The notes under the pieces: model-generated
What the model was told of the DNA's origin: nothing
What the model saw: the letters and a program-made list of their open reading frames with translations, nothing else
Database searches by the model: none
NCBI RefSeq assembly: GCF_044704955.1
Contig: NC_091987.1
Span: 188,852,001-188,916,000, forward strand
Origin: Pristiophorus japonicus
Lineage: Eukaryota
Direction of reading: 5' to 3'
Length of the DNA stretch: 64,000 nucleotides
Shown: one piece after another, positions 15,601 to 58,883 of the stretch
Position numbering within the stretch: position 1 is the first letter of the stretch
How the letters are laid out: the number at the start of each line of letters is the position of its first letter
Program-made: the position numbers and the translations under genes

Positions 15601-15649
15601 ATGCAACTCTTGCTGAAACTGCTTTTAATTTTACAGACAGGAGTTCAAG
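15601..15649 (+). CDS. IgSF receptor exon 1: signal peptide MQLLLKLLLILQTGVQ(G)
   Basis: ATG, hydrophobic leader, consensus donor AAG|GTAAGT, phase 1, in frame with exon 2. Confidence 0.85.
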
Positions 15650-16309
15650 GTAAGTTACTCTGAGCGGGAGAGTTGTTCAATAACGTGGCGTTGGGATGTG
15701 GATGTTTACAGGTATTCTATCCCCTTTTAGAACTCTTCGGTTTTTGAATAGTTGAGGAACTGCAGAGTCTAAGCGAGAAAGCCGTGTCATTTGGACACTA
15801 GATTAAGATCACTGTCACGTTGGTTGGGTTAAGTCTCTATATAACTGATATTTAGATGGAGATACTGTTTTGTGTATTATTGATTGTGAATCCTCACACT
15901 GATATAAGGCTCGGATTATTTAAAGTTGTGCAGATCTTGGGTAAAAGTAGATCATTCACTGAACAGTGTTCAAAGTGATGGCAGCTACTTCACAGAACTG
16001 GAAACAAAGATCTCCCATAGATTATTATGGCGACATCCTGATCAGTCTGTGACAGTTTGTGTAGAATAAAACAAATTCAAAACAGTTAAAAAATATTACT
16101 GCAGTACATCAGGTCTCAAACGATCTCATAGTTTAGAATGAAGTCTGAAACAGACAAATATTTTTTTTTAATCTTTAGATTAGATCCAATAGGAAGGATA
16201 TCTCAAATTCAGCACTGTTTAAATTGAGTTTTTGATGTTCCCCATTTATGTTGAAAGAATGACTAAATGGCCCCAAATTGAAAATGACAAACTTATTTTA
16301 TTCCATCAG

Positions 16310-16657
16310 GTATCCCGCTGATTGAGGGGGTGACCCAGCCGCGTCTGGTCAGTGTCCGGAAAGGAGAGTCAATCACAATAAACTGTACATTTATTCAAAA
16401 TGGAAGCGATGGTGACTGGGTCTGGGCATACTGGTACAGGAGTTCTCCAGGGGCGTCTGATATTGTTTTTCAAGATAATTTCCCGACCTGCATTCCTAAC
16501 ATTACTCGGGGTGTTTTGAGGCGCTGTGTTTCATTACTGAAGATTGCAAATGTTTCTTTTCATCACTCTGACAATAATTATACATGCGTGGTGAAGGCAC
16601 CGTCAAGCTACCCACCAGTGGAGAGAAAGGGACAAGGAACACGGATACAGATTTATG
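16310..16657 (+). CDS. IgSF receptor exon 2: VJ-type V-set Ig domain
   Basis: Acceptor ttattttattccatcag; VTQP, B-strand C (INCTF), C-strand W (YWYR), F-strand YTC, J-like KGQGTRIQIY; donor G|GTAAAG; phase 1/1. Confidence 0.93.
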
Positions 16658-16721
16658 GTAAAGTGTTGCATATCTTGTAATAAGTAGAAAGACAGTGGCT
16701 TTTTATAGATCTGCAGGTACG

Positions 16722-17540
16722 TTTTTTTTATTCGTTCATGGTATTTCGGTGTCGCTGGTAAGGCCAGTGTTTATTGCCGGTCCCTAATCACGCCACCTTG
16801 AACCACTGCAGTCCTTGTGGTGAAGGTACTCCCGCAGTGCTGTTAGTTCCAGGATCTTGATCCAGCGATGATGAAGGAACGCGATATGCTTCTAAGTCAG
16901 GATGGTGTGTAACTTGGAGGGGAATTTGCAGGTGATGGTGTTCCCATGCGCCTACTGCACTTGTCCTTCTAGGCGATAGAGGTCGCGGGTTTGGCAGGTT
17001 CTGCCGAAGAAGCCTTGACGAGTTGCTGTAGTGCATCTTGTAGATGGTGCACACTGCAGTCACGGTATGCCAGTGGCGGAGAGAGTGAATGTATAAGGTG
17101 GTGGATGGGGTGCCAATCAAGCGAGCTGTTTTGTCCTGGATGGTGTCGAGCTTCTTGAGTGTTGTTGGAGCTGCATTCATCCAGGCCATCACGCTCTTGA
17201 CTTGTGCCTTGTAGATGGTGGAAAGGCTTTGGGGAGTCAGGAGGTGAGACACTCGCTGCAGAATACCCAGCCTCTGACCTGCTCTTGTTCCCACAGTATT
17301 TATGTGGCTGGTCCAGTTAAGTTTTTGGTCAATGGTGACCCCCTAGAATGTTGATGGTGGGGGATTCAGCAATGGTAATGCTGTTGAATGTCATTGGCGG
17401 CGGTTAGACTCTCGTTTGTTAGAGATAGTCATTGCCTGGCAGTTATGTGGCTCGAATGTTACTTGCCACTTATCAGCCTAAGCTTGAATGTCATCCAGGT
17501 CTTGCTGCATGCAGGTGTGGACTGCTTCATTACCTGAATT
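16722..17540 (-). mobile_element. CR1-clade LINE (second family) 3' portion in intron 2
   Basis: ORF 16788-17294: RAGQRLGILQRVSHLLTPQSLSTIYKAQV..LDTIQDK; tail shared with the SINE at 14733. Confidence 0.85.
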
Positions 17541-17852
17541 ATGGTTGGAATTGCATTTGCACCAAACCATTTATGGGAACATACACTATTAACAAGCACA
17601 CTCAATGTAGAACCAGGTTATTTATGTGAATTGTATTGTTACCTCGAAGAATGCAACAGGTAAATCAGCGCTCATGTTTTGAATGATGTTCTCTGTTGGT
17701 TTGTGATGACTTGCCGTTCAGAGTCAATAGTGAGGTATGAATGCCATCACTGAAGTGACTTTTGTATCTCCTTCACTTTCATTGCCTATTGCAGTTATAC
17801 CACAAGATAATTAGTTTTACAATTTCTTAAAGCACAACTCTTTAAGATTATA

Positions 17853-18445
17853 GGGATTGAAATTCGTTATGACCAGGCAGGCATTAGGCGCTGCCTCAAA
17901 TTCCTAAATTCCGTTTTTACTCCCAAAGATGAGAGAGCAGCGCTAAAAAGTAGCGTTGCACACTCATCCTCAGGCGGGAGCTCAGGAGGCCGACTGAATT
18001 TCCCGACGGGAAGCTGCCGCCATGCTAGAAAAAACACGTGAAGGAAAAAAAATAACTAAAACTTCTCTGATCCATACACACACTTCCCCACTCTTAAAAC
18101 TAAAGAAAATATGCAAAAATAAATAAAGAGAAAAACTTACCTTCCTGGGCGACTCCGCCCAAGATCCACTCTTTTACGACCACTTTTTCCTAGCTGTGCG
18201 GCCGCCTCCTGTTACGGCACCATACAAAGCAAATGTCGCAATAGAGACATCAAAGAGGCATTGTACGCTGGATGATGTCACCTCGCGGGTGGCGTTGGCT
18301 GGCGCAGCGTTACCTCTTGGTGCCAAAGAGGTGACTCAATTTAGGACGAGGCGTCAACGCCACTTACCGTCGAAGGTAGGCCTTTGCCGTCTGTTAGCCG
18401 CCTAGCACCAGTGCTAACGGGGAGCGTTATCTAGCGGATTTCTGT
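17853..18445. mobile_element. Degenerate Harbinger-like MITE
   Basis: Starts GGGATTGAAATTCG; CpG-rich body organised like 7761-8347 (A-rich tract, then ACTTACCT); right TIR decayed. Confidence 0.55.
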
Positions 18446-18493
18446 TTTACTTGTTTACGTTACCCCCATGCTCAGTTACCTTTTTGAGACATT

Positions 18494-20763
18494 GGGCTAG
18501 AAATTGCACTTCGCCCCGATTGGGGGCGGTAATCTCGTCTGGCACGGAAGAACACAAGAACAAAGAACACAAGAAGTAAGAGCAGGAGTAGGCCATAATG
18601 CCCCTTGAGCCTGCTCCGCCATTCAATACGATCATGACTGATCTGATCATGGACTCAGGTCCGCTTCACTGCCCGCTCCCCATAACCCCTTATTCCTTTA
18701 CCGGTTAAGAAACTGCCTATCTCTGTCTCAAATTTATTCAATGACCCAGCTTCCACAGCTCTCTGAGGCAGCGAATTCCACGGATTTACAACCTTCTGAG
18801 AGAAGAAATTCCTCCTCATTTCAGTTTAAAATGGGCGGCCTGTTATTCTAAGATTATGCCCCCGAGTTCTAGTCTCCCCTATCAGTGGAAACATCCTCTC
18901 TGCATCCACCTTGTCAAGCCTCCACACAATCTATACGTTTTGATAAGATCACCTCTCATTTTCTGAATTCCAATGAGTAGAGGCCCAACCTACTCAACCT
19001 TTCCTCATAAGTCAACCCCCTCATCCCCGGAATCAACCAAGTGAACCTTCTCTGAACTGCCTCCAAAGCAAGTATATCCTTTCTTAAATATGGAAACCAA
19101 AACTGTACGCAGTATTCCAGGTGTGGCCTCACCAATAACCTGTATAACTGTAGCAAGACTTCCCTGCTTTTATACTCCATCCCCTTTGCAATAAAGGCCA
19201 AGATTCCATATGCCTCCCTGATCACTTGCTGTACCTGCATACTAACCTTTTGTGTTTCATGCACCAGGACCCCCAGGTCCTGCTGTACTGCAGCACTTTG
19301 TAATATTTCTCCATTTAAATAATAACTTGCTCTTTGATTTTTTTCGGCCAAAGTGCATAACCTCACACTTTCCAACATTATATTCCATCTGCCAAAATTT
19401 TGCCCATTCACTTAGCCTGTCTATATCCTTTTGCAGGTTTTTGTGTCCTCCTCACGCATTGCTTTTCCTCCCATCTTTGTATCGTCAGCAAACTTGGCTA
19501 CCTTACACTCGGTCCCTTCATCAAAGTCATTAATATAGATTGTAAATAGTTGGGATCCCAGCACTGATCCCTGCGGCACCCTACTAGTTACTGATTGCCA
19601 ACCTGAGAATGAACCATTTATCCCGACTCTCTGTTTTCTGTTAGTTAGCCAATCCTCTATCCATGCTAAAATATTAACCCCAACCCGTGAACTTTTATCT
19701 TGTGCAGTAACCTTTTATGTGGCACCTTGTCAGATTCCTTCTGAAAGTCCAAATACACCAAATCCATTGATTCCCCTTTATCCAGCCTGTTCATTACATC
19801 CTCAAACAATTCCAGCAAATTTGTCAAACATGACTTCCCCTTCATAAATCCATGCTGACTCTGCCTGAGTGCATCAATCTTTTCCAAATGTCCTGCTACT
19901 GCTTGTTTAATAGTGGACTCCAACATTTTCCCAACCACAGATGTTAGGCTAACTGGCCTATAGTTTCCTGCTTTTTGTCTGCCTCCTTTTTTAAATAGTG
20001 GTGTTACATTTGCAGTTTTCCAATCTGCTGGGACCTCCCCAGAATCCATGGAATTTTGGTAAATTACAACCAATGCATCCACAATCCCTGCCACTACTTC
20101 TCTTAGGATGCAAGCCATCAGGTCCAGGGGATTTCTGCGCCTTTAGTCCAATTATCTTACTGAGTACCACCTCCTTAGTGATTGTGATCGTGTTAAGTTC
20201 CTCCTCCCACCAAAGCCTCTTGACGATCCACTGTTGGGATATTTTTAGTGTTCTCTACAGTAAAGACTGATACAAAATATTTGTTCAGAGTTTCTGCCAA
20301 CTCCATGTTCCCCATCACTAATTCCCCGGTCTCGACCCCTAAGGAACTAACATTTACTTTAACCACTCTTTTCCTTTTTATATACCTATAGAAACTCACT
20401 ATCTTAATTTATATTTCATGCTAGTTTACTTTCATAGTCTATCTTCCCTTTCTTAATCATTTTTTAGTCATTCTTTGCTGGCTTTTAAAAGCTTCCCCAA
20501 TCTTCTGTCCTCCCACTAGTTTTGACCAATATGTATGCCCTTGTTTTTAATTGGATACCGTCCTTTATTTTTCTTGAGAGTTGTGAAATATCTCCTTAAA
20601 TGTACGCCATTGTTCATCAACCTTCCTTCACTTTAATCCCACTCCCGATGCGGAATTGGGCCGTACGCCCCTCAAAGGAAGCGGAGCGCTGTCTCTGGCA
20701 CTGGCACTGGCACTCTGCCCCAGCGGCACTAACGGGGCTATAAAAAGGGCCAATTTCACTCCC
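18494..20763. mobile_element. Harbinger-like MITE split by a CR1 insertion
   Basis: Left end GGGCTAGAAATTGC, right end CCAATTTCACTCCC; CpG-rich flanks on both sides of the CR1. Confidence 0.55.
18549..20636 (-). mobile_element. CR1 (HER1-like) LINE, 5'-truncated
   Basis: ORFs 18956-19411, 19666-20118 and 20193-20399 carry RT-region motifs; (aagaacac)n tail at 18549-18575; similar to the element at 900-6402. Confidence 0.93.
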
Positions 20764-21579
20764 TTTGTCTCCTAATGCCTTGCAGTTCCACTTAATATTC
20801 TAAATACTTAGAGTTGTTCCATTATATAATCAATAATATCAAATTAATAATCCAATAAAATGGAAAAAAAACCCTGCAACTGTTGAAAACATACAGCAGG
20901 TCAGTTAGCATCTGTAAAGAGAAGAGCTAGTTTAATGTTTTGGTTGGACCCCATGATCAAAACTCAAAACGAAGTCATATAATCAACAGATGATAACTAA
21001 AATGGGCAAAATGTGTGATAAATAGTAGTAAAGAAATTTCAATGAATAAATCCAACAGATTTCAGAAAAATTATTTTCTGAGACTTGCGATGTAAAGAGT
21101 ACAGCTTCAGGTTGAGAGGGTTCATGCCAGGCATCACAGCTGTTGGTAGTGTCTACTTGCATCATAAAATGCTGATCCTGATACAGGACAAGCGGATCAT
21201 TAATGAATAATAACCAAGGGACGCAGTCAAAGTGCTTTATTGTGTCCCATATGCGGAGGTCATGGAATCATGAGAAACTCAGTTGTCCGAGAAAGGAATT
21301 AATTTGAATTGCATTGGCACTAACCTAATGCAGTTGATCAAAATAGCTGTGTTGATGGTAAATGGCAGTTATTCATAGATTTCTATATTTAGGCTAATTA
21401 TTTCCTTTTGAGCTTTGTATCTTGCAATGTACTATTTGGATTATATGTAATTTTCTATTAGTTATCTATTGACTCTCTGAGAAAACATTTTTTTTTGACA
21501 TTACCATATCTGTAGCATATAAACGAGTAGATTTTCCGAGCCCTCGCCAATGGTGAAGGAACTTTCACAACACATATCT

Positions 21580-22045
21580 TAAATCCCACCAAGTTCGTTC
21601 ACCTCTCACCCCTGTGCTTGCTGACCAACATTGGCTCCTGGTTCATCCCCTTGAATTTAAAATTCTCAACCTATTGTTCAAATCCCTCCATGCCTTTGTC
21701 CCTCTCTATCTCTGTAACCTCCTCCAGCCAGACAACACTCAGAGAACTCTGCGTTCTTCCAATTCTGACCTCTTGTGCATCCCCGATTTGCTCTGCCTCA
21801 CCATTGGCCGCCGTGTCTTCAGTTGCCTAGGGTCTGAGCTCTGGAAATTTCTCCCTACAGCTCTCCACCTCGCTCCTCCTGTGAAATGCCTCTTCAAACC
21901 TACCTCTTTGACCAAGCTTTTGGCCACCTGTCTTAATATCCCCTTGTATGGCTCAAAGTCAAATTTTATCTGTTAACGCTCTGTGAAGCACTTTTGGAGG
22001 TTTTGCTACATCAAAGGCGCTTTATTAATGCAAGTTTTTGTTGTT
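21580..22045 (+). mobile_element. L2-clade LINE 3' end
   Basis: ORF 21614: HWLLV..FKILNLLFKSLH..YLCNLL..RTLRSS..GRRVFSCLG..LW; tail ctgtgaagcacttttgg..aaaggcgc..aatgcaagtt. Confidence 0.85.
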
Positions 22046-22974
22046 TTACATCGGAAAATCAGCTTAATGAAATCAATGAATGAAAAATTGCTGGCAGTGG
22101 GCCCACAATGTTTGATTCACAAATGTGGGAGGTGACAAGGACCAAGCGATTTGACTTTGTCGTGTGTAAAAGAATATCACTGATGATGGTACTGAGCGAG
22201 TGGTAATTCCAAATTCAAGCTTTATTTTATTATTTACTTTATGACAATACCATTACACCTCATTCCCAATTGGTGATACCGCACTGTACACATCCATTAC
22301 CAAGAAGGCAACTGCATGACTGGCTCCCAGACTTTGGCCAGTTCATCAGTGAAAATGCCTCTCGAGACTGCATTGCAGCAGTTCCACAATGATTTTCACT
22401 CTAATGTTCTGTAGGGTTTTTGCTTTTCTTGTCCTTACTACAGTTCTTTGACTGGGATTTACAGGAACAAAATATACACGACACAAAGGTTTAGTCTCCA
22501 CCCAAAAGTATTAGTTTATTAAAACTAACAACACACGGACAAAACCCCCTGAGAGATTTGGTTGAAACTGACAACCACCAATTCCTCGGCTGTCTCTGAG
22601 GTTTACTGTCAGCCCGTTCCTTAGTTGCAGCTTGTGTCCCGAAGACTGGCTGGCTTCTGTATCTGTACTGCTGTGCTGTGCTGGGTTCAAAAATGGGTCT
22701 TCTTTATACCAAAAAACAATTTGCAATCTTGGAACCAATTTAACATGATAACCGCATCAAATGTGAACTCTTGATGGCTAATTGTTCCTCATCTGGAGTT
22801 GTTGTTCATGATTACCTTCCCAAGGTGACTTAATGGTTGGTTTTCTGGTAGCATTCATATCCGCATGGCTCAGGGTCCGGTCCATTGTCTGGGCGTACCC
22901 TGCTACCAGCCTTTCAAGAGCCACAGTTCAGAAACAATGTAACCCCTTAAGGCAAATGAATATATGAATGTTCC

Positions 22975-23222
22975 TGTAAAGTCCTGTCCCCTCAGTACAG
23001 ATTCACACGAGGCATGTATTGAAGTCAAGGTCACTCTGGACCTGCACCTTTATTTCACAGCTCTGGAATGCTGCACTTGCCTGAGACCTGTCGTTATATA
23101 CCTGTCTCTTGCAAGTGCACCCCTGGTGGTAAGGTATGCTGGTGGTTACAGGTCATATCTTATTACAGTCATGTATAGCATGTTAGGATACAGTTATATA
23201 TAATAATGTAAGATACATGACA
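22975..23222 (-). repeat. 3' LTR of the Gypsy element
   Basis: TG..CA ends; 7 mismatches in 248 bp versus the 5' LTR by manual count. Confidence 0.97.
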
Positions 23223-23249
23223 TCATCCTCCCCCAACGTCTTATTATCT

Positions 23250-26200
23250 TTATAGGTTCAGTCTCTCAAGTGGTCTACAATCTCGCGTGGAGCGTCTGAG
23301 TTGTGGTTCAGTTGTTTGCCTTGGTGTCTGTTTTTCTTTGGGTGTGGTTGCTGGTATCTTGCCAGGGCTGTCTGTTTCGATTGGTGTGATTGTTGTTGAC
23401 TCGCCTGGGCTGTCTGTTGGGATAGCCCTTTCCTCAGGTTGTTCCTTCTGTCTGTCCACCAGGTGTGGTGCGAGTTCCACATTGTAGTCTGCCTCTGGTT
23501 CCGCAGTGTTGTTGGTAAATCTGCTTTTGACTTGGTCTACATGCCTCCGGCAGGTTTTGCCATTGTCCATTCGGACTACCAGTAGCCTGTTTCCTTCCTT
23601 GTCCATTACTGCCCCTGCAAGCCATTTGGGACCCCTGCCATAGTTTAGTACAAACACTTTGTCCCCTATCTCATTCCATCTCCCCCTCGAATTTCTGTCA
23701 TGGTACTCAGTCAACTTATGGCGCTTTGCCTCAATGATTTCGTGCATGTCTGGGAGGATTAATGAAAGCCTTGTTTTTAAAGTCCTTTTCATCAACAGTT
23801 GCGCAGGGGGGATCTCAGTCCATGAGTGCGGACGAGATCTGTATGCCAGCAGCAGTTGCGACAGGCGACCCTGCAGCATGGGACCTTGGATTTTAAGCAT
23901 GCCTTGTTTAATGATTTGCACTGCTCTCTCTGCCTGGCCATTGGAGGCCGGCTTGAACGGTAACGTCTTGACGTGATTTATGCCGTGGTCAATTATAAAG
24001 TCTTGGAATTCTGCGCTGGTGAAGCACGGACTATTGTCACTGACCAATATGTCAGGGATTCCATGCGTTGCAAACATGGTTGCGAGGCTCTCCACAGTGG
24101 TGGAGGTTGTGCTCGAGTTTAAAATGGTGCATTCGATCCACTTTGAAAATGCATCTACAATTACGAGGAACATTTTGCCCATGAATGGGCCTGCATAGTC
24201 TACGTGCACCTGCGACCACGGTTTGGCAGGCCAGAGCCAGGGGCTCAGTGGAGCCTCCCTGGGGGGCATTGCCGAGTTGGGCACAAATGGTGCACCTTCG
24301 GATGCAGAGCTCCAAGTCCGCGTCAATACCAAGCCACCAGACGTGGGATCTGGCTATGGTCTTCATGAGAATGATCCCCGGGTGCTCGCGGTGGAGCTCC
24401 CGGACAAATGCCTCTCTGCCTCGCAGAGGCATGACTACTCGGCTGCCCCACACCAGGCAGTCTGCTTGTAGTGATAGCTCATGCATGCGCCTGTGAAAGG
24501 GTTTTAATTCCTCAGGGCAGGCATCGCGAGCCTCTGCCCAGTCACCGGTTAGGACACATCTTTTTACTAAGGATAACGTGGGGTCGCTGGCCGTCCAGGC
24601 TCTGATTTGGCGAGCCGTCATGGGCGAACCTGTGGACTCAAAGGCATTGATTGCCATGACTATCTCACAGTCCTGTTTGTCAGACCCTTCCGTGGTCTCC
24701 AGGGGTAGCCTGCTGAGCGCGTCGGCACAGTTGTCTGTGCCTGGTCTGTGCCTTATGGTATAATTGTAGGACGCCAGCATGAGTGCCCACCGTTGAATTC
24801 ACGTCGAGGCGTTGGCGTTTATTGCTTTGCTTTCCGATAGGAGGGACATGAGGGGATTGTTGTCGATTTCTAACGCGAACTTGGCCCCGAAAAGGTATTG
24901 GTGCATCTTTTTGACACCGTACACGCACGCGAGCGCCTCCTTCTCTACCATTCTGTACTCGTGCTCTGCCCGCGAAAGTGACCTGGAGGCATAAGCTATG
25001 GGTTGTAATTTGCCCGCACTATTGACATGTTGCAAAATGCATCCGACCCCATACGCTGACGCATCGCATGTGAAAACTAGCTTTTTACCTGGGTCAAAGA
25101 AAGTCAAAACACTGTTGGAACACAGAAGGTTGCGTGCCTTATTGAAGGCGCGTTCCTGGGTGTCCCCCCAAAACCAATCGCACCCCTTCCTGAGTAGCAC
25201 ATGGAGAGGCTCCAACAGCGTGCTTAAGTTCTGCATAAAGTTCCCAAAGTAATTGAGTAGCCCGAGAAAGGCACGCAGTTCTGAGACATTCCGGGGCCTG
25301 GGTGCCAGGCGAATTGCTTCTGTTTTGGACTCTGTTGGGCGGATTCCATCGGCGGCAATCCTTCTGCCCAAAAATTCAACCTCGGGTGCGAGAAACAGGC
25401 AGTTGGATTTCTTGACTCATAGGCCTACCCGATCCAACCGCTTTAGTACTTCCTCCAAATTACGGAGGTGGGAGTCGGTGTCCCTGCCCGTGATAAGTAT
25501 GTTGTCTTGAAATACAACTGTCCCCGGGATGAACTTGAGCAGACTCTCCATGTTGCGCTGGAATATGGCAGCTGCCGACCTGATGCCGAATGGGCATCGA
25601 TTGTACATGAAAAGGCCTTGATTTGTTGATGGTGGTGAGTAGCTTGGATTCCTCGGTCAATTCTTGCATCATATACGCAGATGTGAGGTCTAATTTTGAG
25701 AATAGTTTACCTCCAGCCAATGTGGAAAATAAGTCCTCCGCACTGGGCAGCGGGTACTGATCCTGTAGGGAGACTCTGTTTATGGTAGATTTGTAGTCCC
25801 CACAGATTCGTACGGATCCATCAGGCTTCATGACTGGGACGATGGGACTTGCCCAGTCGCTAAATTCCACAGGTGATATAATGCCTTCCCGCAGAAGCCT
25901 GTCTAGTTCGTGTTCAATCTTTTCCCTCATCACATAGGTTACAGCTCTGGCCTTGTGATGGACCGGTCTAGCATCCTGTGTGATGTAGATTTTGACTTTG
26001 ACCCCTTTGAAAGTGCCCACACCTGGCTGAAAGAGATGTTCAAATCGCTTTATAACTGTTGAGCAGGAGGTCCGTTCCTCTAATGACATGGCATGGACAT
26101 CATCCCATTTCCAGTTTAGTTTTGCCAGCCAGCTTCTCCTCAGCAGTGCTGGGGTGTCTCCGGGGACAATCCACAGGGGAAGTCGGTTCACTGTCCCTTT

Positions 26201-27434
26201 GTGTGTGACAGAGAGCATGGCGCTGCCGAGGACTGGTACGATTTCTTTGGTATAAGTCCTTAGTTTGGTGTCGACCCTTGTGAGTTTTGGTCTGTCTCTT
26301 TTATGCGGCCACAGTTGTTCAAATTGTTGAGCGCCCATGAGAGATTGACTCACACCCATATCCAGCTCCATGTTGACAGCCGTTGAGTAGGACCCTCATC
26401 ATTATAGGAGGCATCCTGTTGTAGGGGCAGCGGCCATTGATCGTGTTGACCCGCTCTACATCGGTGTCCCGGGTACTGTCCCCACCATCTCCTGGTCCGC
26501 TTTCCGACCCATCCGATTCGTATACCAGCTGAGCTGCTGTTTTTTTGCACATGCGGGCCAAATGCCCTGTATATTCACAATTTCTGCAAACAGCCTGCTG
26601 AAATCGACATCCCCTTGACTTGTGCCCACTCCCACACCTCCAGCACAGACCTGTTCCATTGTTCAAAGTGTTCCCAAAGAATGAGCTGCGTCTGGCTGAT
26701 CTCTCTTGAGCTTCTCTCAGTTTGTACTTGATTGCTCACATTGTGGGTTGATGAGGTGTGAACGACCGTTCCTGTGGCCCTTGATGGCTTCTGCCTGCTG
26801 TCGAGAGCCTGTTCTCCCAGTTTTGTCTGTGTGTGGGGGGTAGCAGCTTGTTTAGTGCTGTGAACTTTTTGTTCCGATATTTCGTTAGTTGTCGTTCCTG
26901 CATTGTAAATCAACCTCGTTTCTTCTTCCACTACCAAGAATGTCTGTGCAACCAGTGCTGCTGCCTCTAAGGTCAGGTTCTTGGTCTCTATGAGCTTTCG
27001 GAATATGTCTGCGTGGCCTATTCCTTCAATGAAAAAGTCTCTCAGCATTTCTCTCCTCAGTTCATCGGAGAACTCACATAAGCAAGCCAACCTCCGAAGT
27101 TCCCCACGACGTCAGGTATGCTCTGGCCCACACAGCGTCTGTAGTTGTAGAACCTGTGTCTGGCCATGTGTAGGCTGCTCGCTGGCTTCATGTGGTCTCT
27201 TACCAGTGTGCTCAATTCTTCAAACGACTTGTTTGCTGGTTTCTCGGGTGCCAGCAGATCCTTCATTAAAGCGTATGTTTTCGAGCCACAGCTGGTCAAG
27301 AGATCGGCTCTTCTCTTGTCTGCCTTATGGTCACCTAACCAGTCTTTGGTTACAAAGCTTTGCTGGAGCCTTTCTATAAAGTCCTCCCAATTGTCTCCCA
27401 CATTGTACTTTTCATCTGATCTGTTGTTCGCCAT
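23250..27434 (-). pseudogene. Frameshifted gag-pol polyprotein
   Basis: Gag MANNRSDEKY; knuckles CWRCGSGHKSRGC and CRNCEYTGHLARMC; protease LDMG (DTG altered); RT FQDN (second Asp to Asn); RNase H CDAS; integrase HREHPG..CTIC, HVDYAGP, SDN, AER; split over several frames. Confidence 0.93.
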
Positions 27435-27469
27435 TCTGTGGATTCTGTAATCCCGTAACCCGTCGCCAC

Positions 27470-27717
27470 TGTAAAGTCCTGTCCCCTCAGTACAGATTCA
27501 CACGAGGCATGTAGTGAAGTCAAGGTCACTCTGGACCTGCACCTTTATTTCACAGCTGTGGAATGCTGCACTTGCCTGAGACTTGTCCTTATATACCTGT
27601 CTCATGCAAGTGCACCCCTGGTGGTAAGGTATTCTGGTGGTTACAGGTCATATCTTATTACAGTCATGTATAGCATGTTAGGATACAGTTATATATAATA
27701 ATGTAAGATACAGGACA
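27470..27717 (-). repeat. 5' LTR of the Gypsy element
   Basis: TG..CA ends; adjacent to the PBS. Confidence 0.97.
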
Positions 27718-27965
27718 GTTCCTGTATCTTTTCAGACAGAAAACCATTGAAGGTGTGAACGTCTCTCTTCTGATAAATGTCCCTCATGATGTCCGATGGT
27801 TTGGCTGCAATGTAACACTGAACCCTTTCTTGCCCAGTTCTTTTTGCAAGCTGTGATGCAGTTCTAAACTTTTATATTCAGTAGTCCACTTTTTACCACT
27901 GGGGGGAGGAACGAATCCTTCATTTCCTACCCTATCTCCCTGGGGCATAGTGCCCAGCCTCTGCT

Positions 27966-28262
27966 CATCATCGTCATAGGCAATCCCTCGTGTTGAGGAT
28001 GACTTGTTTCCACGTCAAAAAGTTCACAGGTGTTTCAATGAAGGACCTAATATTCCAGGTTCCGAACCTAATCTTGAAGGGTGGAAGATGCCTGTGCGTG
28101 AATTTTTTTAACGTATGGTGGCCGTTGCACACCAGCCACCACACTGGCTTGACAGAGCTAGGTATTGGTCCAGTGGCCAGGATTAACCAAGGCGACTGGA
28201 GACCAGCTCTGCTGCACGGGCCTAGAGCGCACACATTTCGCAGTGTGGGCTGGCCTGTGCCA
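27966..28262 (-). mobile_element. Bipartite non-autonomous RTE derivative (5'UTR and ORF start fused to 3' tail)
   Basis: ORF 27974-28234 has FGTWNIRS (APE N-terminal motif) about 20 codons before RDCL*, the C-terminus of the RTE at 14234; tail matches 12390 and 14230. Confidence 0.75.
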
Positions 28263-29919
28263 CTCCCATCTTTACAGACAGGTTGTTGAGCAGAGATTTG
28301 TCCTCAGATCCAATATTTGTCATTAACGTCCATGGGAACTGAGCTGAATGCTACAGTACGCATTGCACCATTTTTCAGGCACAAAATGGGCGCAACATTG
28401 ATACTCCGTGTGTGTGTTCGGGCCACTGCTAAATTTTTCAGCCCCATTTCTCAGGTGTCCCGGGTAGCTTCTGCTAAGCAAATACTAGCTCTCCAGCTCA
28501 GGTAAGGGACTCGGTGGTTTACGGTCTCGAAAGCATCAGCTCACTCCCACCACTCCATGAATCATATTTCAGTCAAATAGGTGCAAGTAGTGGCAGACAT
28601 GCTCGATGCAAGACTTTTATTTTAAGTATTAGTAGGTAGTAACTAAAGAATCTATGTATTAATGCATGCATTCCCAGCTGATAAGATATTCAAGTGAGTT
28701 CAGCTCTTTGCCCCAAGAACTGTAATCGCAGGAACTAAGGGGAAAGAGCATAAACACACACACCTCGTATTTATGAAGTTGATCTCCACTGTAATTAAAA
28801 GAGTTCGTGCTAAAAGTAAATATTTCAACAGAGGTTTACCCATCCATAAATGTTTTGTAATAATAAATGGTCTCCAGCTTTAACATGCAAGGTCAAAAAC
28901 AGTTCTATTTGCATATAGTAAACATTCTAAATGTAGATTATGGTAAAAGTCTTATTAACAGAAGATGTATGCAACTGAATTTCCAGTCATGTCTTCAAAG
29001 TTGAATGCCACCAAAAGCTGCAAGGGCAGAATCTTCCAAGGTCAAGTAGCATTGGCGGGGCCTCATAAGCAGTTGCTGGTATATTGGAAAATTGCCGGTG
29101 CGCTCCACATGAATTTCTATCCATTGATATTAATGAGTCGAAACCAGCGGCAGTGTACTGCAGTTTTCTGATAAGCTGCCCGTTGTGTTGGGCTCTGCCT
29201 TTTGCACAAGGCATTGGAAATTGCAGTCCATGTGCCCGTTGTTGGTGTGACTGGAGCAGAACTGCAGGATGTCACATCAGAGGAACTTAACACAAAATAA
29301 CTGGTCCCGGGTAAGCATGAAGCAATGTAACAAAAGGTGACAGAAATCCACCATCTGCAGTATTCATCACACTCAATGGTAATGCACCTTATATGGACTC
29401 GGCTTCTCTTATAGTGTGTCACAGAGAAGAATCCCAATGTATAATGTTCAACATGTACTCATTCTGTTACCATTAATCCACCATTAAATTGACAATATTA
29501 CTGTTTAGTAGGTAATGTACAACATAGGACTATGTTATGCGATCAGATGATTGCTATTGAGAAATCTCAGTATAAGAACCTGATTGAACAGCTATCTAGA
29601 GTGATATTGGTATAATTCTCTTAAGTTTTGTTTCTTGATTCTTTTCATCTAAAAGACTACTTTAACTACCGATGTGACTCTATTTCATCAAAATAACAGG
29701 TGCTGCATGAAACTACGGCAAAGTATATTTTAATTTAGAATTCATTTAGCAATAAATGATTTTACATTATGATACTCAATACATGTTCAGAATAGTGGCA
29801 CTAAAAATCTCTGTTTAATGTTGCCATTCATATCTATGCACAAGATGTTAATAAATGTTCACAGAGCAGGATATGTTCTTTATGGGTTCATGCATTATGT
29901 TTTGTGCTCTCTCTCTCAG

Positions 29920-30222
29920 GACCTCCTGAAGTTTCTACTGTGGATGGTGCTTTGGTTGCTGGACGTCGGTCCAACCTGACCTGCTCTGCCAAGGGATGGT
30001 ACTCTGAGGGTATCTCCTTTACCTGGGCATGCCATGGAACAAACATCTGCACAAACGTCACCACACTGACCTCAAAAAGAACTGGTCATGGTACATCTGT
30101 TGCTACCAGCCAGCTTGAGATCGTCCCTAAAGTGAGTGACCATGGATCTGTCTGTAGCTGTCAGATCAACCATGTGACTTTCAGACAGCCAGTAATAAAT
30201 GAGATCAAACTGCATGTTATGT
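29920..30222 (+). CDS. IgSF receptor exon 3: C1-like Ig domain
   Basis: Acceptor ctctctctctcag; LTCSAKGWYSEGISFTW, GTSVATSQL, CQINH; donor T|GTGAGT; phase 1/1. Confidence 0.92.
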
Positions 30223-30759
30223 GTGAGTATAATCCTCAACATTTTAAATATTGGTTTTATTCTCTTTAATGTTAAAAATACTGACTTTAACTTTGGACTC
30301 CCTCTTATTGTTTCCTCCCTGTTCTCTGTTTACAACTGGGACATATATCTTCATCTTTGCCGTGCCTATGTAAACTATGTAACCTCTGTGTCTATTTTGG
30401 CTGCTGTTCTGGACTCAATCCCATTATTTTTATCTCCCTTTTCCTTTCTCTTTTCTTTACCCTTCTTGGACCCTTCTCTCCTGTCTCCCTCCCTGTTACC
30501 CAATCATACCTTGTTTCATTTCTGCCCTCGGGTACTTTGTTCATCCAAATCCCTACATCATCCCTTCATTATTCCTCTATTCTCCTGCTGCTCTCCCAGG
30601 CTTGAGTCCTTCTTGGATAAGCCGATAGCTTCCCTCTGTGTCTCTCTTGGCAATCTCTGGAGGGCACATCGAGGCATGTGTTGTTGCTGCCTCCACATGA
30701 GCGGCAAACCCAACTATTTCATCTTACTCTCCTGCCTACCTTCCCACCCAGCACACTTG

Positions 30760-33505
30760 CTGGGGGCTAATCCTGCCAATCTCCTTCCTGCTCAGTTCAC
30801 TCTCCCACCGCTGACCTCATGGAGTCTGCCAGCTGATCAATAATCACCACCCCTCTCCACATCTCCCTCCAAAATATCTTTTCATTTATATACAAGGCCC
30901 TTGCCATCTATGATCTTATTGTGGATGATTGCATTGATCTCATTGCTTTGACAGAAACTTGGTTCATGGATGACACCTTACCCCTTAGTGAAGCCTCTCC
31001 ATCTGGCTACACCCTCCACCACCTGCCCTGCCCAAACTCCCACAGTGGCAGTGTGGCCCCTATTACTAAATCTCACCTTGGTCTGTCCACTTACACTTCT
31101 GCCACATTTTGCCCCTCGCCTTGTTCCACTCCTCTTGCCTCTCCTTTAAAATTCTCATTCTCTACCACCCACTGAAACCCCACTCCTTTCCTCCTTCAGC
31201 TTTTGCACCAAGCAGCTTCTCATCCTTGGTGATTTCAACCTTCAGCTCAATAGCCCACCTTGGCCTTGCTCCTCTGAGTTCATTGTACTCCCTTAACCTC
31301 TCCATAAATGCTCTTCTACCCATATTCATGGCCAGCACCTCAACCTTGCCATCTCATGTAGCCTCACTGTTCTCATCATCTCAATCACAGACAAGGCCAA
31401 ATCTGATCACTTCCTTGTTTCCCTCACCACTCACATCCTCCTTCCCCTTCCAACCCTCACCTTCTGTGTCCACTCCTGAAAAAAACTTTCCCCTAAGACA
31501 TTTTAATGGCACTTTCAAACTTCCAACTGTCAAGCCTATGGGTCTCCATTTGCCACAATACTTCTGTAGCTATAGATCTGATCAATCACACCCTCAGCTA
31601 TGCCCTTGATGCCATTTTCCCCAGTACTCTCAAACACCTTGGTTGTTCCCCCGGCACAACGCCCATCTTCACTGCTTTAAATTCAAGAGAGGGGATCTCA
31701 TAGAAACATATAAAATTCTGGCGGGACTGGACAGGTTAGATGCAGGAAGAATGTTCCCGATGTTGGGGAAGTCCAGAACCAGGGGTCACAGTCTTAGGAT
31801 AAGGGGTAAGCCATTTAGGACCGAGATGAGGAGAAACTTCTTCACTCAGAGTGTTGTTAACCTGTGGAATTCTCTACTGCAGAGAGTTGTTGATGCCAGT
31901 TCGTTAGATATATTCAAGAGGGAGTTAGATATGGCCCTTACAGCTAAAGGGATCAAGGGGTATGGAGAGAAAGCAGGAAAGGCGTACTGAGGTGAATGAT
32001 CAGCCATGATCTTATTGAATGGTGGTGCAGGCTCGAAGGGCCGAATGGCCTACTCCTGCACCTATTTTCTATGTTTCTATGTTTAAGAGGCACAGAAATG
32101 AATTTATGGCACAACTGGTTTAGCCATTCATCGCTAAATCCGATGTCACCACCCTCCTCAAAAAACCACCCATGACCATGTCTTTGCAGCCTACTGTCCC
32201 CATCTTCAACCTCACTTTCCTCTCCAAAGTCCTTGAAAATGTCACTTCCCACATTGGTGCTCATCTTTCCTACAACTCCATGTTTGAACTTCTCCAATCA
32301 GGTTTACACCCCTGCCAGAGCATTGGAATGGCCCAAATCAAAGTCACAAATTACATCCTCTGTGACTGTGGACATAGTGCTACTATCTCTCCTCATCTTT
32401 CATGTCCTCTGCAGTCTGTGATACTGTCGACCACATCATGCTCCTCAAATGCCTCTCCTCCATCTTCCAGCTGAGTGGGACTGCCCTCGCCTGGTCTCAC
32501 TCTTACCTATTCAGTTGTAGCCAGAGAATCTCCTGCAAAGGCATTTCTTTTCACCCTGATACGGTTACCTCTGGCATCCTTAAGGATCTATCCTTGGGGC
32601 CCCTCCTTTTTCTCATCTACATGCTGCCCATTGCTGGCATCATCTGAAGAAATTACATCAGGTTTCACATGTATGCTGAAGGCACACAGCTCTTCTCACT
32701 CAACCCTTCCACTGCCTCTTTGTTGTCAGACTGTTTGTCTGAGATTCAGTCCTGGAAGAGCCCCAATTTCCTCCAATTAAATGTTGGAAAGGCCGATGCC
32801 ATTGCCTTTGGCTCCCACAAAACATTCTGTTCCTTCGCCACCAATTCCATCTCCTTCCCTGGTCACTGTCTCAGGCTGAATCAGGCATTTTGCATCCTGG
32901 TGCATATTTGACGCTTAGCTGAACTTCCAAACCTATATCCTCTCCATCTCAAAGACCCCCTACTTCCAACCTCGGAATATCGCCCATCTTTGCCTCTGTC
33001 TCATGTATTCTGCTGCTGAAACCCCCATCCATTCTTTTGTTACCTCCAGATTCGACTATTCCAATGCTCTCCTGGCCAGCTTCCCATTTTCCACTCCCAT
33101 AAACTTGAGAACATCAAAATCTCTGCTATACATATCTTAACCCACACCAAGTTCTACTCTCCCATCACCCTTGTGCTCACCGACCTACATTCTCTTCCAG
33201 TCCGATAACCCTCCAAGAACTCTGCATTTCTCCAAATCTGGCCTTGTACATTCCCCACTCTCCTTGCCACATCATTGGTAGCCCTGCCTTCAGCCTTCTA
33301 GGCTCTGGAATTCCCTCCCTAAACCTCTCCACCTCTCTCCTTTTAAGACACTCCTAAAAACCTAACTCTTTGACCAAGCTTTTAGTTACACTTCCTAATA
33401 TTTTCTTCATTGGCTCGGTAGCAATGTTTGTCTGATTAGACTCCTGTGAAGTGCATTGGGATATTTTCCTATCAGAAATGCGTAATGTAAATGCAAGTTG
33501 CTATT
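30760..33505 (+). mobile_element. Decayed L2 LINE in intron 3
   Basis: IDLIALTETW (30921), PIFNLTFLSKVLE (32172), DTVDHIMLL..LGPLLFLIYMLP (32402), NFLQLNVGK (32669); L2 tail at about 33440-33500. Confidence 0.85.
31690..32081 (+). mobile_element. Young CR1 (HER1-like) 3' fragment inside L2
   Basis: RGDLIETYKIL..KGYGEKAG; nearly the same as the 3' end of 38524-41455; possible TSD tt(c/t)aagag. Confidence 0.9.
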
Positions 33506-33557
33506 GTATTCACATTATTTCTATGTAAAATTAAGTGCACATTATCTTTACTGTTAG

Positions 33558-33878
33558 ATGGGCCGCAAGATCCCACAATAATGTACAGGTTGACCAAGAA
33601 TGGCAGTTACCATCCTGGGACGTGTAGCCCCATCACCGTCCCTACTAACTCATTCCTGGAACTGAGTTGCTCCGTGGACAGTAACCCAGCCTCCTCTGTG
33701 ATCTGGGTAAAGGATGGGGAGAACCACACTGAGATGTTCCAACTCGCAGCTGGATTAAATAGTTCAAAACTGAAGATAAGTCATTTCCAGCCTGAAGTTA
33801 GAGGAGTCTACTGGTGTTTGGCAAACAACAGCTATGGCCGGGGAAACGCAAGTGTTTCAATAGAAGCTGAACAGGAAG
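33558..33878 (+). CDS. IgSF receptor exon 4: C2/I-set Ig domain
   Basis: Acceptor tctttactgttag; junction gives YGP; LSCSVDSNPASSVIWVK..GVYWCLANNSYG; donor G|GTAAAT; phase 1/1. Confidence 0.92.
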
Positions 33879-34435
33879 GTAAATAGAATCTAAAAATACT
33901 CATGCAAAGATCGCAGTGTCTGTTGCAGTGGAATCACTTTTAAATAATCGGAGCGCAACTTAATTGTTTCAGGCATTTTCTCCCCTGGTCTCAAGTGGAT
34001 GAATTGTAATATTTGTTCAATTTTAAAATACACTTGTGTAGCAAATAACACATACCATTCCGAAAACATTATCAATGTTAAGCCACTTACAGATTATAGT
34101 AAATTTGTCCATGATTAATACCACTTGATTGCAGCTATAAGACCAACGATTTGCTTTTCCGTACAGCTTTTTAATGTTGGGCCAAGAAAATGGAAAATTA
34201 AAATGCTGCAGTTTTATTTATCGACAGTAGTGTACATCAGACACAAAACTTGCTTTGGAATCTGAAGAAAATAGCTGTGCTGTTGTCACAGAAAAATTAA
34301 AATATTGTATTTGTATAACATCTTTTCATGTCTTCTAGAAATATCTCCAAGCACTTCAAATACAGTAAATTGTGTTTAGGTGTGGTGACCATTTATTAAT
34401 TGTGATTTTATTATTATTTACCATCTCTTTCACAG

Positions 34436-34537
34436 GTCATTGGTATTTTTCTGTTCTGGTTCCACTCATTGCTCTCAGTGGATTTATCGCTGCGGTAACA
34501 ATATACTTTTATCTGAACTGGAAGAGGCAGTTGAAAG
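34436..34537 (+). CDS. IgSF receptor exon 5: transmembrane segment GHWYFSVLVPLIALSGFIAAVTIYFYLNWKRQLK
   Basis: Acceptor ccatctctttcacag; uncharged hydrophobic run followed by KR stop-transfer residues; donor AAG|GTAAAT; phase 1/1. Too short to appear in the ORF track. Confidence 0.9.
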
Positions 34538-34717
34538 GTAAATCTTAAAATAAATCATTGGTTGTAGGTGTTAACCTTACCATTGACATCAATAGCAAGC
34601 TGTAAAATGATGTGGTTTTCACTAGCCAGTGTGATTATACAGTCCTTTGCAGTATTGTGTTTGTACGTGTTCTTGCTTGTTGGGGTATTTTCATGTCCCA
34701 ATCTTTCTGTTACATAG

Positions 34718-34746
34718 GCTGTTCATACCAAGCTCAGGCACTATAG
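34718..34746 (+). CDS. Probable terminal cytoplasmic exon GCSYQAQAL*
   Basis: Good acceptor tctttctgttacatag; phase-1 entry; TAG 34744-34746; ATTAAA 34815-34820. Alternative tails exist (see findings). Confidence 0.45.
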
Positions 34747-35174
34747 AAGATATTTTTAAACATTCTCTGAATTTCTGGATGTCATACCAGAACTACGGTA
34801 TGCTATACCAGAAAATTAAATAATATATTGGGATTTTGATCAAGACAAAACCAAAATTATTTTTGCAGAAAATATGTAACCAATATTTTCTATTAGTTGC
34901 TGAATGGCATCCTTTCACGGTTGGATTAGGATGCAGGAGGTAAATTAACTGTACTCCAACATTTCTATCTCTGTAATACGTGTCAGTATTTGACTAGAAT
35001 TGGGACTGAAGGACATACTGAAACTAAAGGTACACAAATTACAGAGACCTGAAAGTTACATCTCAGGATCCTGAGGAAAGCTCGGGAAGTAATAGCAAAG
35101 GCTCTGACTATAATTTTCTAAAACTCATTGGGAAAGAAAGTTGTACCAGATGACTGGAGGATGAAAAAATTGAT

Positions 35175-35712: not shown

Positions 35713-35809
35713 ACCCTTCTTCACAAAATGAGATAAACCAGGAAATTGGAGACAAGTTACACTTATTTCAGTTGTGAGTAAACTACTAGAGTCTATAACA
35801 CAGGATTAG

Positions 35810-58683: not shown

Positions 58684-58883
58684 NNNNNNNNNNNNNNNNN
58701 NNNNNNNNNNNNNNNNNNNNNNNNNNNNNNNNNNNNNNNNNNNNNNNNNNNNNNNNNNNNNNNNNNNNNNNNNNNNNNNNNNNNNNNNNNNNNNNNNNNN
58801 NNNNNNNNNNNNNNNNNNNNNNNNNNNNNNNNNNNNNNNNNNNNNNNNNNNNNNNNNNNNNNNNNNNNNNNNNNNNNNNNNNN
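58684..58883. other. Assembly gap (200 N)
   Basis: Run of N. Confidence 1.

What the first reader, a model, noticed from the sequence alone, without database searches (positions are those of the whole stretch)
15601..34746. Non-rearranging VJ-C1-C2/I transmembrane receptor gene spread over 19 kb of transposon-filled introns
Seen: five exons with canonical splice sites, all phase 1, join into an uninterrupted 374-codon frame (leader, V, C1-like, C2/I, TM) with 12 N-glycosylation sequons. The V exon already contains the J-like GQGT G-strand, and I found no RSS next to it. Known: germline VJ domains occur in the NKp30/CD28/CD28H/IGSF6/NITR/SIRP group, and C1 domains are largely limited to Ig, TCR, MHC, tapasin, SIRP and some B7/nectin-like proteins. 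Inference: VJ plus C1 plus a Siglec/CD22-like CSVDSNP domain matches no mammalian gene I recognise. It may be a chondrichthyan-lineage immune receptor with an antigen-receptor-like VJ-C1 core.
Basis: partly seen in the sequence, partly recalled or inferred. Interest (0 to 1): 0.8.

Follow-up and report, generated by a model that had tools for sequence, protein, structure and literature searches.

The report
Sawshark light-chain-like inhibitory receptor gene
This is the front part of a real, already predicted Japanese sawshark gene for a cell-surface receptor whose outer end resembles a ready-made antibody light chain. Databases label it a sialic-acid lectin, which the sequence does not support.

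Summary
The five exons are real. They match at 100% a public predicted protein of Pristiophorus japonicus (492 aa, auto-named "sialic acid-binding Ig-like lectin 14").

A 126-residue cytoplasmic tail with three tyrosine motifs (TVYAIV, VPYADI, SEYSAI) has no match in the window. The 29-nt end piece at 34718-34746 is unsupported.

- **Domain 1** is a germline-joined VJ domain most like Ig lambda V.
- **Domain 2** is C1-set by sequence; the fold search cannot separate C1 from C1-like.
- **Domain 3** is I-set, of the MAG/CD22 type.

The family is not limited to cartilaginous fish. I found it in 15 shark and ray species, in sturgeon and paddlefish, and in Arapaima. I found no tetrapod member; the nearest named tetrapod proteins are SIRP-like.

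It fails the Siglec V-domain test and the SIRP and UrIg architecture tests. The best reading is an inhibitory, non-rearranging VJ-C1-I receptor, possibly paired with a tail-less paralogue.

Five paper searches found no description of the family. Earlier scan notes report other non-rearranging VJ receptor families elsewhere in this genome, but not this gene.

The parts
15601..15649 (+). Exon 1: start codon and most of the signal peptide (MQLLLKLLLILQTGVQ + 1 base), a split leader in phase 1. The public model ends it at 15642.
   Evidence: The leader is 100% identical to the Heterodontus protein P0160. P0189 residues 1-14 map to 15601-15642.
16310..16657 (+). Exon 2: germline-joined VJ domain with a canonical B-F cysteine pair, WYRSSPG (FR2-like), an extra invariant cysteine pair (PTC...RRC) and the J-like KGQGTRIQIY. 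The public model uses an alternative acceptor at 16327.
   Evidence: Pfam V-set 27.2 bits. PDB phmmer: the best 60 of 1758 are all antibody or VNAR V domains, mostly lambda. The model (pLDDT 88.8) has only antibody, TCR and nanobody V domains among the 44 rows shown, ranks 1-50. No RSS.
16658..29919 (.). Intron 2 (13.3 kb), filled with transposon remains: minus-strand LTR-retrotransposon gag/protease/RT/integrase-like ORFs at about 23250-27434 and LINE reverse-transcriptase fragments at about 18956-20118.
   Evidence: ORF translations, read by eye. No family scan was run on them.
29920..30222 (+). Exon 3: C1-set domain (B-strand C, C-strand W, F-strand C-Q-I-N-H). It contains an internal donor, CCTAAA|GTGAGT, at 30131|30132.
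   Evidence: Pfam C1-set 34.4 bits against C2-set_2 27.2. PDB hits are UrIg2, Ig, SIRPgamma d3, IgNAR C1 and MHC II. C, Q and H are invariant in 16 of 16 family rows. The internal donor is used in X2 record 9.
33558..33878 (+). Exon 4: I-set/C2 domain (LELSCSVDSNP...GVYWCLANNSYG).
   Evidence: Pfam Ig_3 44 bits and I-set 42 bits. PDB hits are titin, DSCAM, neurofascin, MAG and CD22. Spliced contigs of run X2 begin exactly at the acceptor (33558) and end exactly at the donor (33878).
34436..34537 (+). Exon 5: transmembrane helix plus NWKRQLK. It has no charged residue in the helix and an open phase-1 donor.
   Evidence: It is 100% identical to P0189 residues 333-366 and 67% identical to the Heptranchias long form.
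34596..34717 (+). Uncertain: an open phase-1 reading (ASCKMMWFSLASVIIQSFAVLCLYVFLLVGVFSCPNLSVT-stop). It weakly resembles the hydrophobic C-terminal exon of the tail-less paralogues P0166 and P0165. It may be an alternative or decayed terminal exon.
   Evidence: Frame listing. The tblastn match at 34628-34681 has E 3.3 only. X2 has contig depth 12.2 in bin 34600-34799, but the contig rows were not shown.
34718..34746 (+). It is not supported as an exon.
   Evidence: It is present as an ORF but is absent from P0189 and from the other family proteins whose sequences I read.

Best explanation
Window 15601-34537 holds the first five exons (leader, VJ, C1, I-set, TM) of a Pristiophorus japonicus gene. 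The gene is publicly predicted as a 492-aa type I membrane protein.

**Family.** It belongs to an old fish family of non-rearranging receptors, seen in elasmobranchs, sturgeon and paddlefish, and at least one teleost. These receptors combine a light-chain-like VJ-C1 outer half with an I-set stalk domain, a TM helix and a tail carrying three conserved tyrosine motifs: T-x-Y-A-x-V, V-[SP]-Y-A-D-I and S-E-Y-S-x-[IV].

**Inferred mechanism (not shown).** The V domain binds an unknown ligand. Src-family kinases phosphorylate the ITIM/ITSM-type tyrosines. SH2 phosphatases (SHP-1/2) are recruited and damp activation.

**Paralogue.** A close paralogue in the same species (P0166) has a nearly identical D2 and D3, a more divergent V and a tail-less hydrophobic C-terminus. 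It may serve as a paired or decoy partner.

**Missing part.** The tail exons lie outside the window.
For: **Gene model.**
- Canonical sites and open frames.
- 100% match to P0189.
- Collinear orthologues: V 45-60% identical, D2 50-80%, D3 42-73%.
- Spliced contigs of run X2 stop exactly at the E3 acceptor, the E4 acceptor and the E4 donor.

**Domains.**
- Pfam scores.
- A profile of 16 family proteins aligns V plus D2 in one collinear stretch with lambda light chains (positions 23-218), UrIg2 (31-229) and SIRPalpha (23-221).
- The V model matches only antibody, TCR and nanobody V domains among the rows shown.
- G-x-G-T, the F-strand C-Q-x-x-H and an extra cysteine pair in V are conserved across the family.

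**Tail.** All 14 of 14 elasmobranch long forms carry [TI][IV]YAxV and V[SP]YADI, and 13 of 14 carry S[EV]YSxx. Sturgeon and paddlefish keep VPYADI and SEYAVI.

**Family range.**
- 15 of the 17 hits to P0006 are elasmobranch members.
- Acipenseriform proteins match the profile over positions 3-467 at 220-230 bits. V-C1-C1 proteins reach at most 64 bits in one stretch.
- The tree puts 24 family rows apart from 3 V-C1-C1 rows at 100/100. Within it there is a batoid clade (99/97) and a less well supported shark clade (83/89).
Against: - I saw no transcript of the window's own copy. The X2 contigs carry the residues of the paralogue P0166, and the runs are of unrecorded kind.
- The only assembled E3-E4 joint uses an internal donor that breaks the frame.
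- The inhibitory function rests on motif resemblance alone.
- Language-model features put the whole protein nearest to MAG, CD22 and Siglec clusters, score 0.96.
- Foldseek does not separate D2 from Siglec or nectin D2.
- I did not see the tail exons, so I cannot show that this copy's 3' part is intact.
Confidence: 0.78

Rival explanations
1. It is a true Siglec (MAG/CD22/CD33-related family): a sialic-acid-binding lectin with an inhibitory tail, as the public names say.
For: - Automatic names: Siglec-8, -12, -13 and -14, MAG-like and sialoadhesin-like.
- The Atlas feature search gives MAG, CD22 and Siglec-6/10 clusters at 0.96.
- D2 plus D3 aligns collinearly with MAG (129-337) and Siglec-8 (165-340).
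- D3 is of the MAG/CD22 type.
- The tail pair x-Y-A-D-I and S-E-Y-S-x-x-R recalls the CD33-type ITIM plus ITIM-like pair. That comparison is from memory, not tested.
Against: - No Siglec appears among the 60 best solved relatives shown for the V exon, nor among the 44 Foldseek rows shown, ranks 1-50.
- The Siglec alignments start only at D2.
- The V domain keeps the canonical B-F cysteines, and no arginine is invariant in V across 16 family rows.
- D2 scores higher as C1-set in 6 of the 7 sequences scanned, and its solved relatives are C1 domains.
Confidence: 0.08
2. It is the fish counterpart (orthologue or co-orthologue) of tetrapod SIRP, in which the membrane-proximal C1 domain was replaced by an I-set domain.
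For: - SIRPalpha aligns from V through the first C1 domain (profile 23-221, E 2e-20), and SIRPgamma d3 matches D2.
- The nearest named tetrapod hits of the paddlefish member are SIRP-like proteins, 29% identical over 31% of the query.
- The Atlas structure search lists a SIRPalpha-like cluster at TM 0.47.
- VJ plus C1 plus an ITIM tail is SIRPalpha's logic. That is from memory.
Against: - Domain 3 is I-set, not C1.
- Identity to SIRP-like proteins is 22-38%, and for the shark members it is no higher than to other V-C1n proteins.
- The window V exon gave no blastp hit at E 0.1 or below to the three reptile SIRP- or NCR3LG1-like proteins, while D2 did.
- Those proteins fall outside the family at 100/100.
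Confidence: 0.1
3. It is a nectin/PVR/CADM-type adhesion molecule (V, C1-like, C2 architecture).
For: - The domain order is the same.
- D2 also passes the CD80-like C2-set_2 model (27.2 bits).
- Nectin-1 D2 appears among the Foldseek hits.
- The Atlas structure rows include CADM4, nectin-3 and nectin-4 at TM 0.43-0.49.
Against: - No nectin, PVR or CADM chain appears among the 60 rows shown for the V or D2 sequence searches or for the family profile search.
- The tail carries ITIM/ITSM-type tyrosines and ends in ..QDLRTA. That is not a nectin- or CADM-type C-terminal motif, a comparison made from memory.
- TM scores under 0.5 are weak.
Confidence: 0.03
4. The window copy is an unexpressed or decaying duplicate, and only the paralogue P0166 is used.
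For: - The spliced contigs seen carry P0166 residues at 4 of 4 listed non-synonymous differences.
- No tail exon lies in 29 kb downstream.
- The introns are heavily invaded by transposons.
Against: - All five exons are open with canonical sites.
- A public model includes a full tail.
- Run X1 holds 0.55 of the exact 31-letter words sampled from this copy's V exon, and it has depth over E5, which the P0166 model lacks.
Confidence: 0.06

Closest known systems
SIRPalpha (signal-regulatory protein alpha; solved ectodomain 2wng)
   Same: A non-rearranging V domain with a J-like G-x-G-T strand, followed by a C1-set domain. The V-C1 pair aligns collinearly. It is a type I membrane protein with ITIM-type tyrosines; the SIRP tail is recalled, not tested.
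   Different: The third domain here is I-set, not C1. Identity is low (22-29%). The extra cysteine pair in V is family-specific. No CD47 link is known, and orthology was not shown.
UrIg / UrIg2 of elasmobranchs (PMC12227049, section 7 read; solved 9dmx)
   Same: A germline VJ exon with a split leader and no rearrangement. UrIg2 is the best solved relative of D2 (E 5.6e-12), and its V-C1 pair is collinear with the family profile (31-229). Both are found in sharks and rays.
   Different: According to the paper, UrIg2 has nine C1 domains in nurse shark and forms disulfide-linked dimers. This family has one C1 domain, then an I-set domain and an ITIM/ITSM-type tail. Linkage to the MHC or to the antigen-receptor complex was not examined here.
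Ig lambda light chain (V-J-C1)
   Same: The closest sequence and fold matches for the V domain, including an FR2-like WY..PG and a G-x-G-T strand. V plus C1 is collinear over about 195 residues.
   Different: V and J are fused in the germline and there is no RSS. The protein is membrane-anchored, with an extra I-set domain and a signalling tail.
Siglecs (MAG, CD22, CD33-related)
   Same: An I-set/C2 stalk domain of the same type, tail tyrosine motifs of similar look, the public names, and nearest-neighbour status in language-model features.
   Different: The V domain is of antigen-receptor type, with canonical cysteines and no invariant arginine. D2 is C1-set by sequence.

Membership tests
Siglec | N-terminal V-set domain of Siglec type, with an essential sialic-acid-binding arginine and an atypical cysteine pattern (features recalled from memory) | tested here: not met
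   No arginine is invariant in V among 16 family rows, and the canonical B and F cysteines are invariant. V's best 60 solved sequence relatives and the 44 Foldseek rows shown (ranks 1-50) are antibody, TCR or VNAR V domains, with no Siglec. Siglec alignments begin at D2.
Siglec | C2-set domains follow the V domain | tested here: inconclusive
   D3 is I-set/C2. D2 scores C1-set 34.4 against C2-set_2 27.2, and C1-set is higher in 5 of 6 relatives. Foldseek ranks MAG, CD22 and CD33 D2 close to MHC II beta-2.
Siglec | Binds sialylated glycans | not testable with these tools
   Needs a glycan array or a cell-binding assay.
SIRP | V(J)-type N-terminal domain followed by two C1-set domains | tested here: not met
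   The V with G-x-G-T and the first C1 are met. The third domain is I-set/Ig_3 with no C1-set hit.
SIRP | Orthology or synteny with the SIRP locus; CD47 binding | not tested
Reptile SIRP-like proteins fall outside the family at 100/100.
UrIg/UrIg2 | Non-rearranging VJ exon with a split leader | tested here: met
   A single V exon ends in KGQGTRIQIY, the leader is split in phase 1, and there is no RSS.
UrIg/UrIg2 | A chain of several C1 domains after the V domain (three or more; nine in nurse shark UrIg2 per PMC12227049) | tested here: not met
   One C1-set domain, then I-set, then TM.
UrIg/UrIg2 | Linkage to the MHC (UrIg) or to the IgH/TCR-alpha-delta complex (UrIg2) | not tested
Nectin/PVR/CADM | V, C1-like and C2 domains with family-level sequence similarity and an adhesion-type tail | tested here: not met
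   The architecture is met. No nectin, PVR or CADM chain appears in the 60 rows shown. The tail carries ITIM/ITSM-type motifs.
Rearranging Ig/TCR | Separate V and J segments flanked by RSS | tested here: not met
   V and the J-like strand sit in one exon. No heptamer/nonamer pair lies next to it.
ITIM-bearing inhibitory IgSF receptors (functional class) | Cytoplasmic [ILVS]-x-Y-x-x-[ILV] motifs, conserved, and no charged TM residue | tested here: met
   P0189 carries TVYAIV, VPYADI and SEYSAI. These are conserved in 13-14 of 14 elasmobranch long forms. The TM exon has no K, R, D or E within the helix. Phosphatase binding was not tested.

The most novel reading that the evidence does not exclude
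This family is a third surviving lineage of germline-joined, light-chain-like VJ-C1 genes, beside UrIg/UrIg2 and SIRP. It dates to the jawed-vertebrate ancestor, survives in cartilaginous and early-branching ray-finned fishes, and has been lost or changed beyond recognition in tetrapods. Its VJ-C1 half would be a relic of the pre-RAG antigen-receptor precursor, joined by exon shuffling to a Siglec-type stalk and inhibitory tail. That would make it a direct link between antigen-receptor ancestry and the Siglec/SIRP class of inhibitory receptors.
Probability: 0.2. Interest if true: 0.7.

Novelty: new variant of a known kind. Interest (0 to 1): 0.45.

Why it matters
Non-rearranging VJ-C1 genes are the main material for reconstructing how antibodies and T-cell receptors arose before the RAG transposon split a V exon (PMC12227049, PMC10751288).

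This family adds a conserved VJ-C1 gene with a lambda-like V domain. It sits in databases under lectin or adhesion names across 15 elasmobranch species, sturgeons and a teleost, and it carries a clear inhibitory-type tail.

It gives comparative immunologists a named set of sequences to place in V and C1 phylogenies. It also gives them a candidate paired receptor (long inhibitory form and tail-less form) to test in sharks.

The gene itself is already predicted, and its kind is familiar. The gain is a corrected reading, not a new principle.

Tried and rejected
**Paralogues and neighbours.** I looked for paralogous exons in the window and found none (tblastn). ORF lists of both flanks showed only transposon-like ORFs and masked stretches, with no neighbouring gene.

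**Tail exons.**
- A splice-aware scan for ITIM-bearing exons downstream of E5 found nothing convincing.
- tblastn with the tails of four orthologues and with P0189 itself found nothing below E 0.001.
- One hit, at 63762-63884 (E 0.007-0.05), contains stop codons, and I treat it as noise.

**C-terminal exon of P0166/P0165.** Only a weak match appeared, E 3.3 at 34628-34681.

**Fold test of C1 against C2.** Foldseek on the D2 model (pLDDT 77.8) was ambiguous. The two VIA-align libraries were not installed.

**Literature.** Five searches found no paper on this family:
- UrIg with shark
- PRARP / antigen receptor precursor
- Siglec / elasmobranch / ITIM / C1-set
- SIRP / shark / nonrearranging / VJ domain
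- Siglecs / shark / CD33-related

What I saw of each paper:
- PMC12227049: the outline and section 7.
- PMC10751288: passages found by term search.
- All other papers: the search listing only.
- Fu et al. 2019 (PRARP) and Flajnik et al. 2023 (UrIg): seen only as reference entries.

Table S1 and figures S1-S2 of PMC12227049 could list further VJ-C1 genes and so bear on the novelty claim.

**Not done.**
Exons were searched one by one.
- Whole-protein steps used natural stored proteins returned by the tools, including P0189, the public product of this gene.

Full report
**Observation.** The five exons exist as described.
- I read the sequence, translated each exon in frame and recomputed the borders.
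- The exons are E1 15601-15649, E2 16310-16657, E3 29920-30222, E4 33558-33878 and E5 34436-34537.
- All have AG/GT sites and all are phase 1. They sum to 1123 nt (374 codons plus one base) and carry 12 N-glycosylation sequons.
- The V exon ends in ...VERKGQGTRIQIY. A scan of both strands for heptamer/nonamer pairs found nothing in or beside it.
- The window holds no second copy of any of these exons. Its flanks show only transposon-like ORFs and masked N stretches, which I left alone.

**Identity of the gene.**
- An exhaustive HMMER search with the D2 exon alone gave 273 proteins at E 0.001 or below. Among them was a small set of single-stretch hits of 380-494 aa with D2 at residues of about 135-233.
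- These carry automatic names such as "myelin-associated glycoprotein-like", "sialic acid-binding Ig-like lectin 12/13", "sialoadhesin-like" and "uncharacterized".
- A word search with the whale-shark member returned 17 proteins, 15 of them elasmobranch members.
- Exon-by-exon blastp showed the closest to be a Pristiophorus japonicus protein, P0166: V 88.7%, D2 99%, D3 94.3%.
- P0166's 90% cluster holds a second sawshark protein, P0189 (492 aa, "sialic acid-binding Ig-like lectin 14").
- tblastn of P0189 on the window gives 100% identity over E1, E2 and E5 and over the exon-encoded parts of its E3 and E4 alignments. So P0189 is this gene's public product, and the window is Japanese sawshark. 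Earlier scan notes on other pieces of this genome name the same species.
- The public model joins E1 to E2 at 15642|16327.

- The frame is still open at the E5 donor.
- P0189 continues for 126 residues and contains TVYAIV, VPYADI and SEYSAI.
- Neither this tail nor the tails of four orthologues match anything in the 29 kb downstream. The tail exons therefore lie beyond the window, or in masked sequence that I did not examine.

**Domains.**
- *V.* Pfam V-set scores 27.2 bits. The 60 best solved relatives shown, of 1758, are all antibody or VNAR V domains, mostly lambda. The alignments cover FR2 (WY..PG) and the G-x-G-T strand. A model built with 17 relatives (pLDDT 88.8) matched only antibody, TCR and nanobody V domains in the rows shown, though at modest TM scores of 0.5-0.63.
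- *D2.* C1-set scores 34.4 bits against 27.2 for C2-set_2, and C1-set is higher in 5 of 6 relatives scanned. Its solved relatives are UrIg2 (E 5.6e-12), Ig constant domains, SIRPgamma d3, IgNAR C1 and MHC II beta-2. No Siglec, nectin or CD80 is among the 60 shown. The F-strand C-Q-x-x-H is invariant in 16 of 16 rows. Foldseek on the D2 model (pLDDT 77.8) is ambiguous: MHC II beta-2, Rst D2, MAG D2, CD22 D2, IgNAR C1 and nectin-1 D2 all fall at about E 1e-5.
- *D3.* It is I-set/Ig_3 (42-44 bits), with titin, DSCAM, neurofascin, MAG and CD22 as solved relatives.
- *Whole family profile.* V plus D2 aligns in one stretch with lambda light chains, UrIg2 and SIRPalpha. D2 plus D3 aligns with MAG and Siglec-8.

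**Family range.**
- Members occur in 11 shark and 4 batoid species.
- Paddlefish and sturgeon proteins match a profile of 12 elasmobranch long forms over nearly its whole length in one stretch (220-230 bits). V-C1-C1 proteins reach at most 64 bits in one stretch. The fish proteins keep the extra V cysteine pair, VPYADI and SEYAVI.
- An Arapaima protein ("hemicentin-2-like") and several unnamed proteins also fit.
- In a 27-row tree the 24 family rows separate from 3 V-C1-C1 rows at 100/100. The elasmobranch clade (100/99) splits into batoids (99/97) and sharks (83/89). The deeper branches are unresolved, and the tool warned of long branches.
- I saw no chimaera or tetrapod member, which does not prove absence. 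The nearest named tetrapod proteins are SIRP-like, 29% identical over 31% of the query.

**Paralogues.**
- In the tree, the window's long form is sister to the sawshark short form P0166 (100/100). The two Heptranchias forms are also sisters (95/95).
- The short forms end in a hydrophobic stretch with no tail. V differs more than D2 between the partners: 59% against 85% in Heptranchias, and 89% against 99% in sawshark.
- This looks like a paired or decoy arrangement. A GPI anchor for the short form is my inference only.

**Expression.**
- No run on record as RNA holds the V exon. Two runs of unrecorded kind hold 0.55 and 0.34 of its sampled words.
- Laid on 29800-35799, run X2 gave spliced contigs.
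- Record 9 covers 29919-30131 and then 33558-33718, and 120 of its letters lie upstream of the E3 acceptor. Record 14 ends exactly at 33878.
- These contigs support the E3 acceptor and both E4 borders.
- They carry the P0166 residues at all 4 listed non-synonymous differences, so they come from the paralogue or from another haplotype.
- The E3-E4 joint uses an internal donor at 30131|30132, which shifts the frame and gives a stop after 7 codons.
- The canonical 30222 donor rests on the protein models only.

**Against my reading.**
- The Atlas feature search places P0189 nearest to MAG, CD22 and Siglec clusters (0.96).
- Its structure search lists CADM4, a SIRPalpha-like cluster and nectin-3 at TM 0.45-0.49.
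- The inhibitory function is inferred from motifs.

**Verdict.** This is a real, publicly predicted gene whose automatic lectin name is not supported by its V domain. It is a non-rearranging VJ-C1-I receptor with an inhibitory-type tail, and it belongs to an old fish family that I found in no paper.

Noticed in passing
window 30122-30140: An internal consensus donor (CCTAAA|GTGAGT) inside the C1 exon is used in the only assembled E3-E4 contig (run X2, record 9). It removes 91 nt, shifts the frame and gives a stop after 7 codons of E4. It may be a regulated unproductive splice or a minor form.
   Followed up: partly
window 34596-34717: A hydrophobic open reading in phase 1 lies just after the TM exon. 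It weakly resembles the C-terminal exon of the tail-less paralogues P0166 and P0165. Run X2 has contig depth 12.2 in bin 34600-34799 but none over E5, and the contig rows were not shown, so the cause is unexplained.
   Followed up: partly
window 23250-27434 (minus strand): A string of long ORFs with integrase-, RT/RNase H-, protease- and gag-like translations: a fairly young LTR retrotransposon inside intron 2. LINE RT fragments lie at about 18956-20118 and a 588-aa RT ORF at 38615-40381.
   Followed up: no
window 58684-58883, 60080-60344, 60350-61307: Stretches of N flanked by G/C-rich simple repeats (the GC fraction of the 58001-60000 bin is 0.565).
   Followed up: no
stored protein P0154 (Hemiscyllium ocellatum, 610 aa): The epaulette shark member carries two tandem copies of the V domain, with residues 19-131 nearly repeated at 134-246. 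The V exon has therefore been duplicated in that lineage, or in that gene model.
   Followed up: no
stored proteins P0001, P0003, P0004: Large unnamed proteins made of a V domain and 5-10 C1-set repeats occur in white shark ('titin-like'), a stingray and a tree frog ('uncharacterized'). They are the next-best relatives of D2 and may be UrIg2-like genes under misleading names.
   Followed up: no
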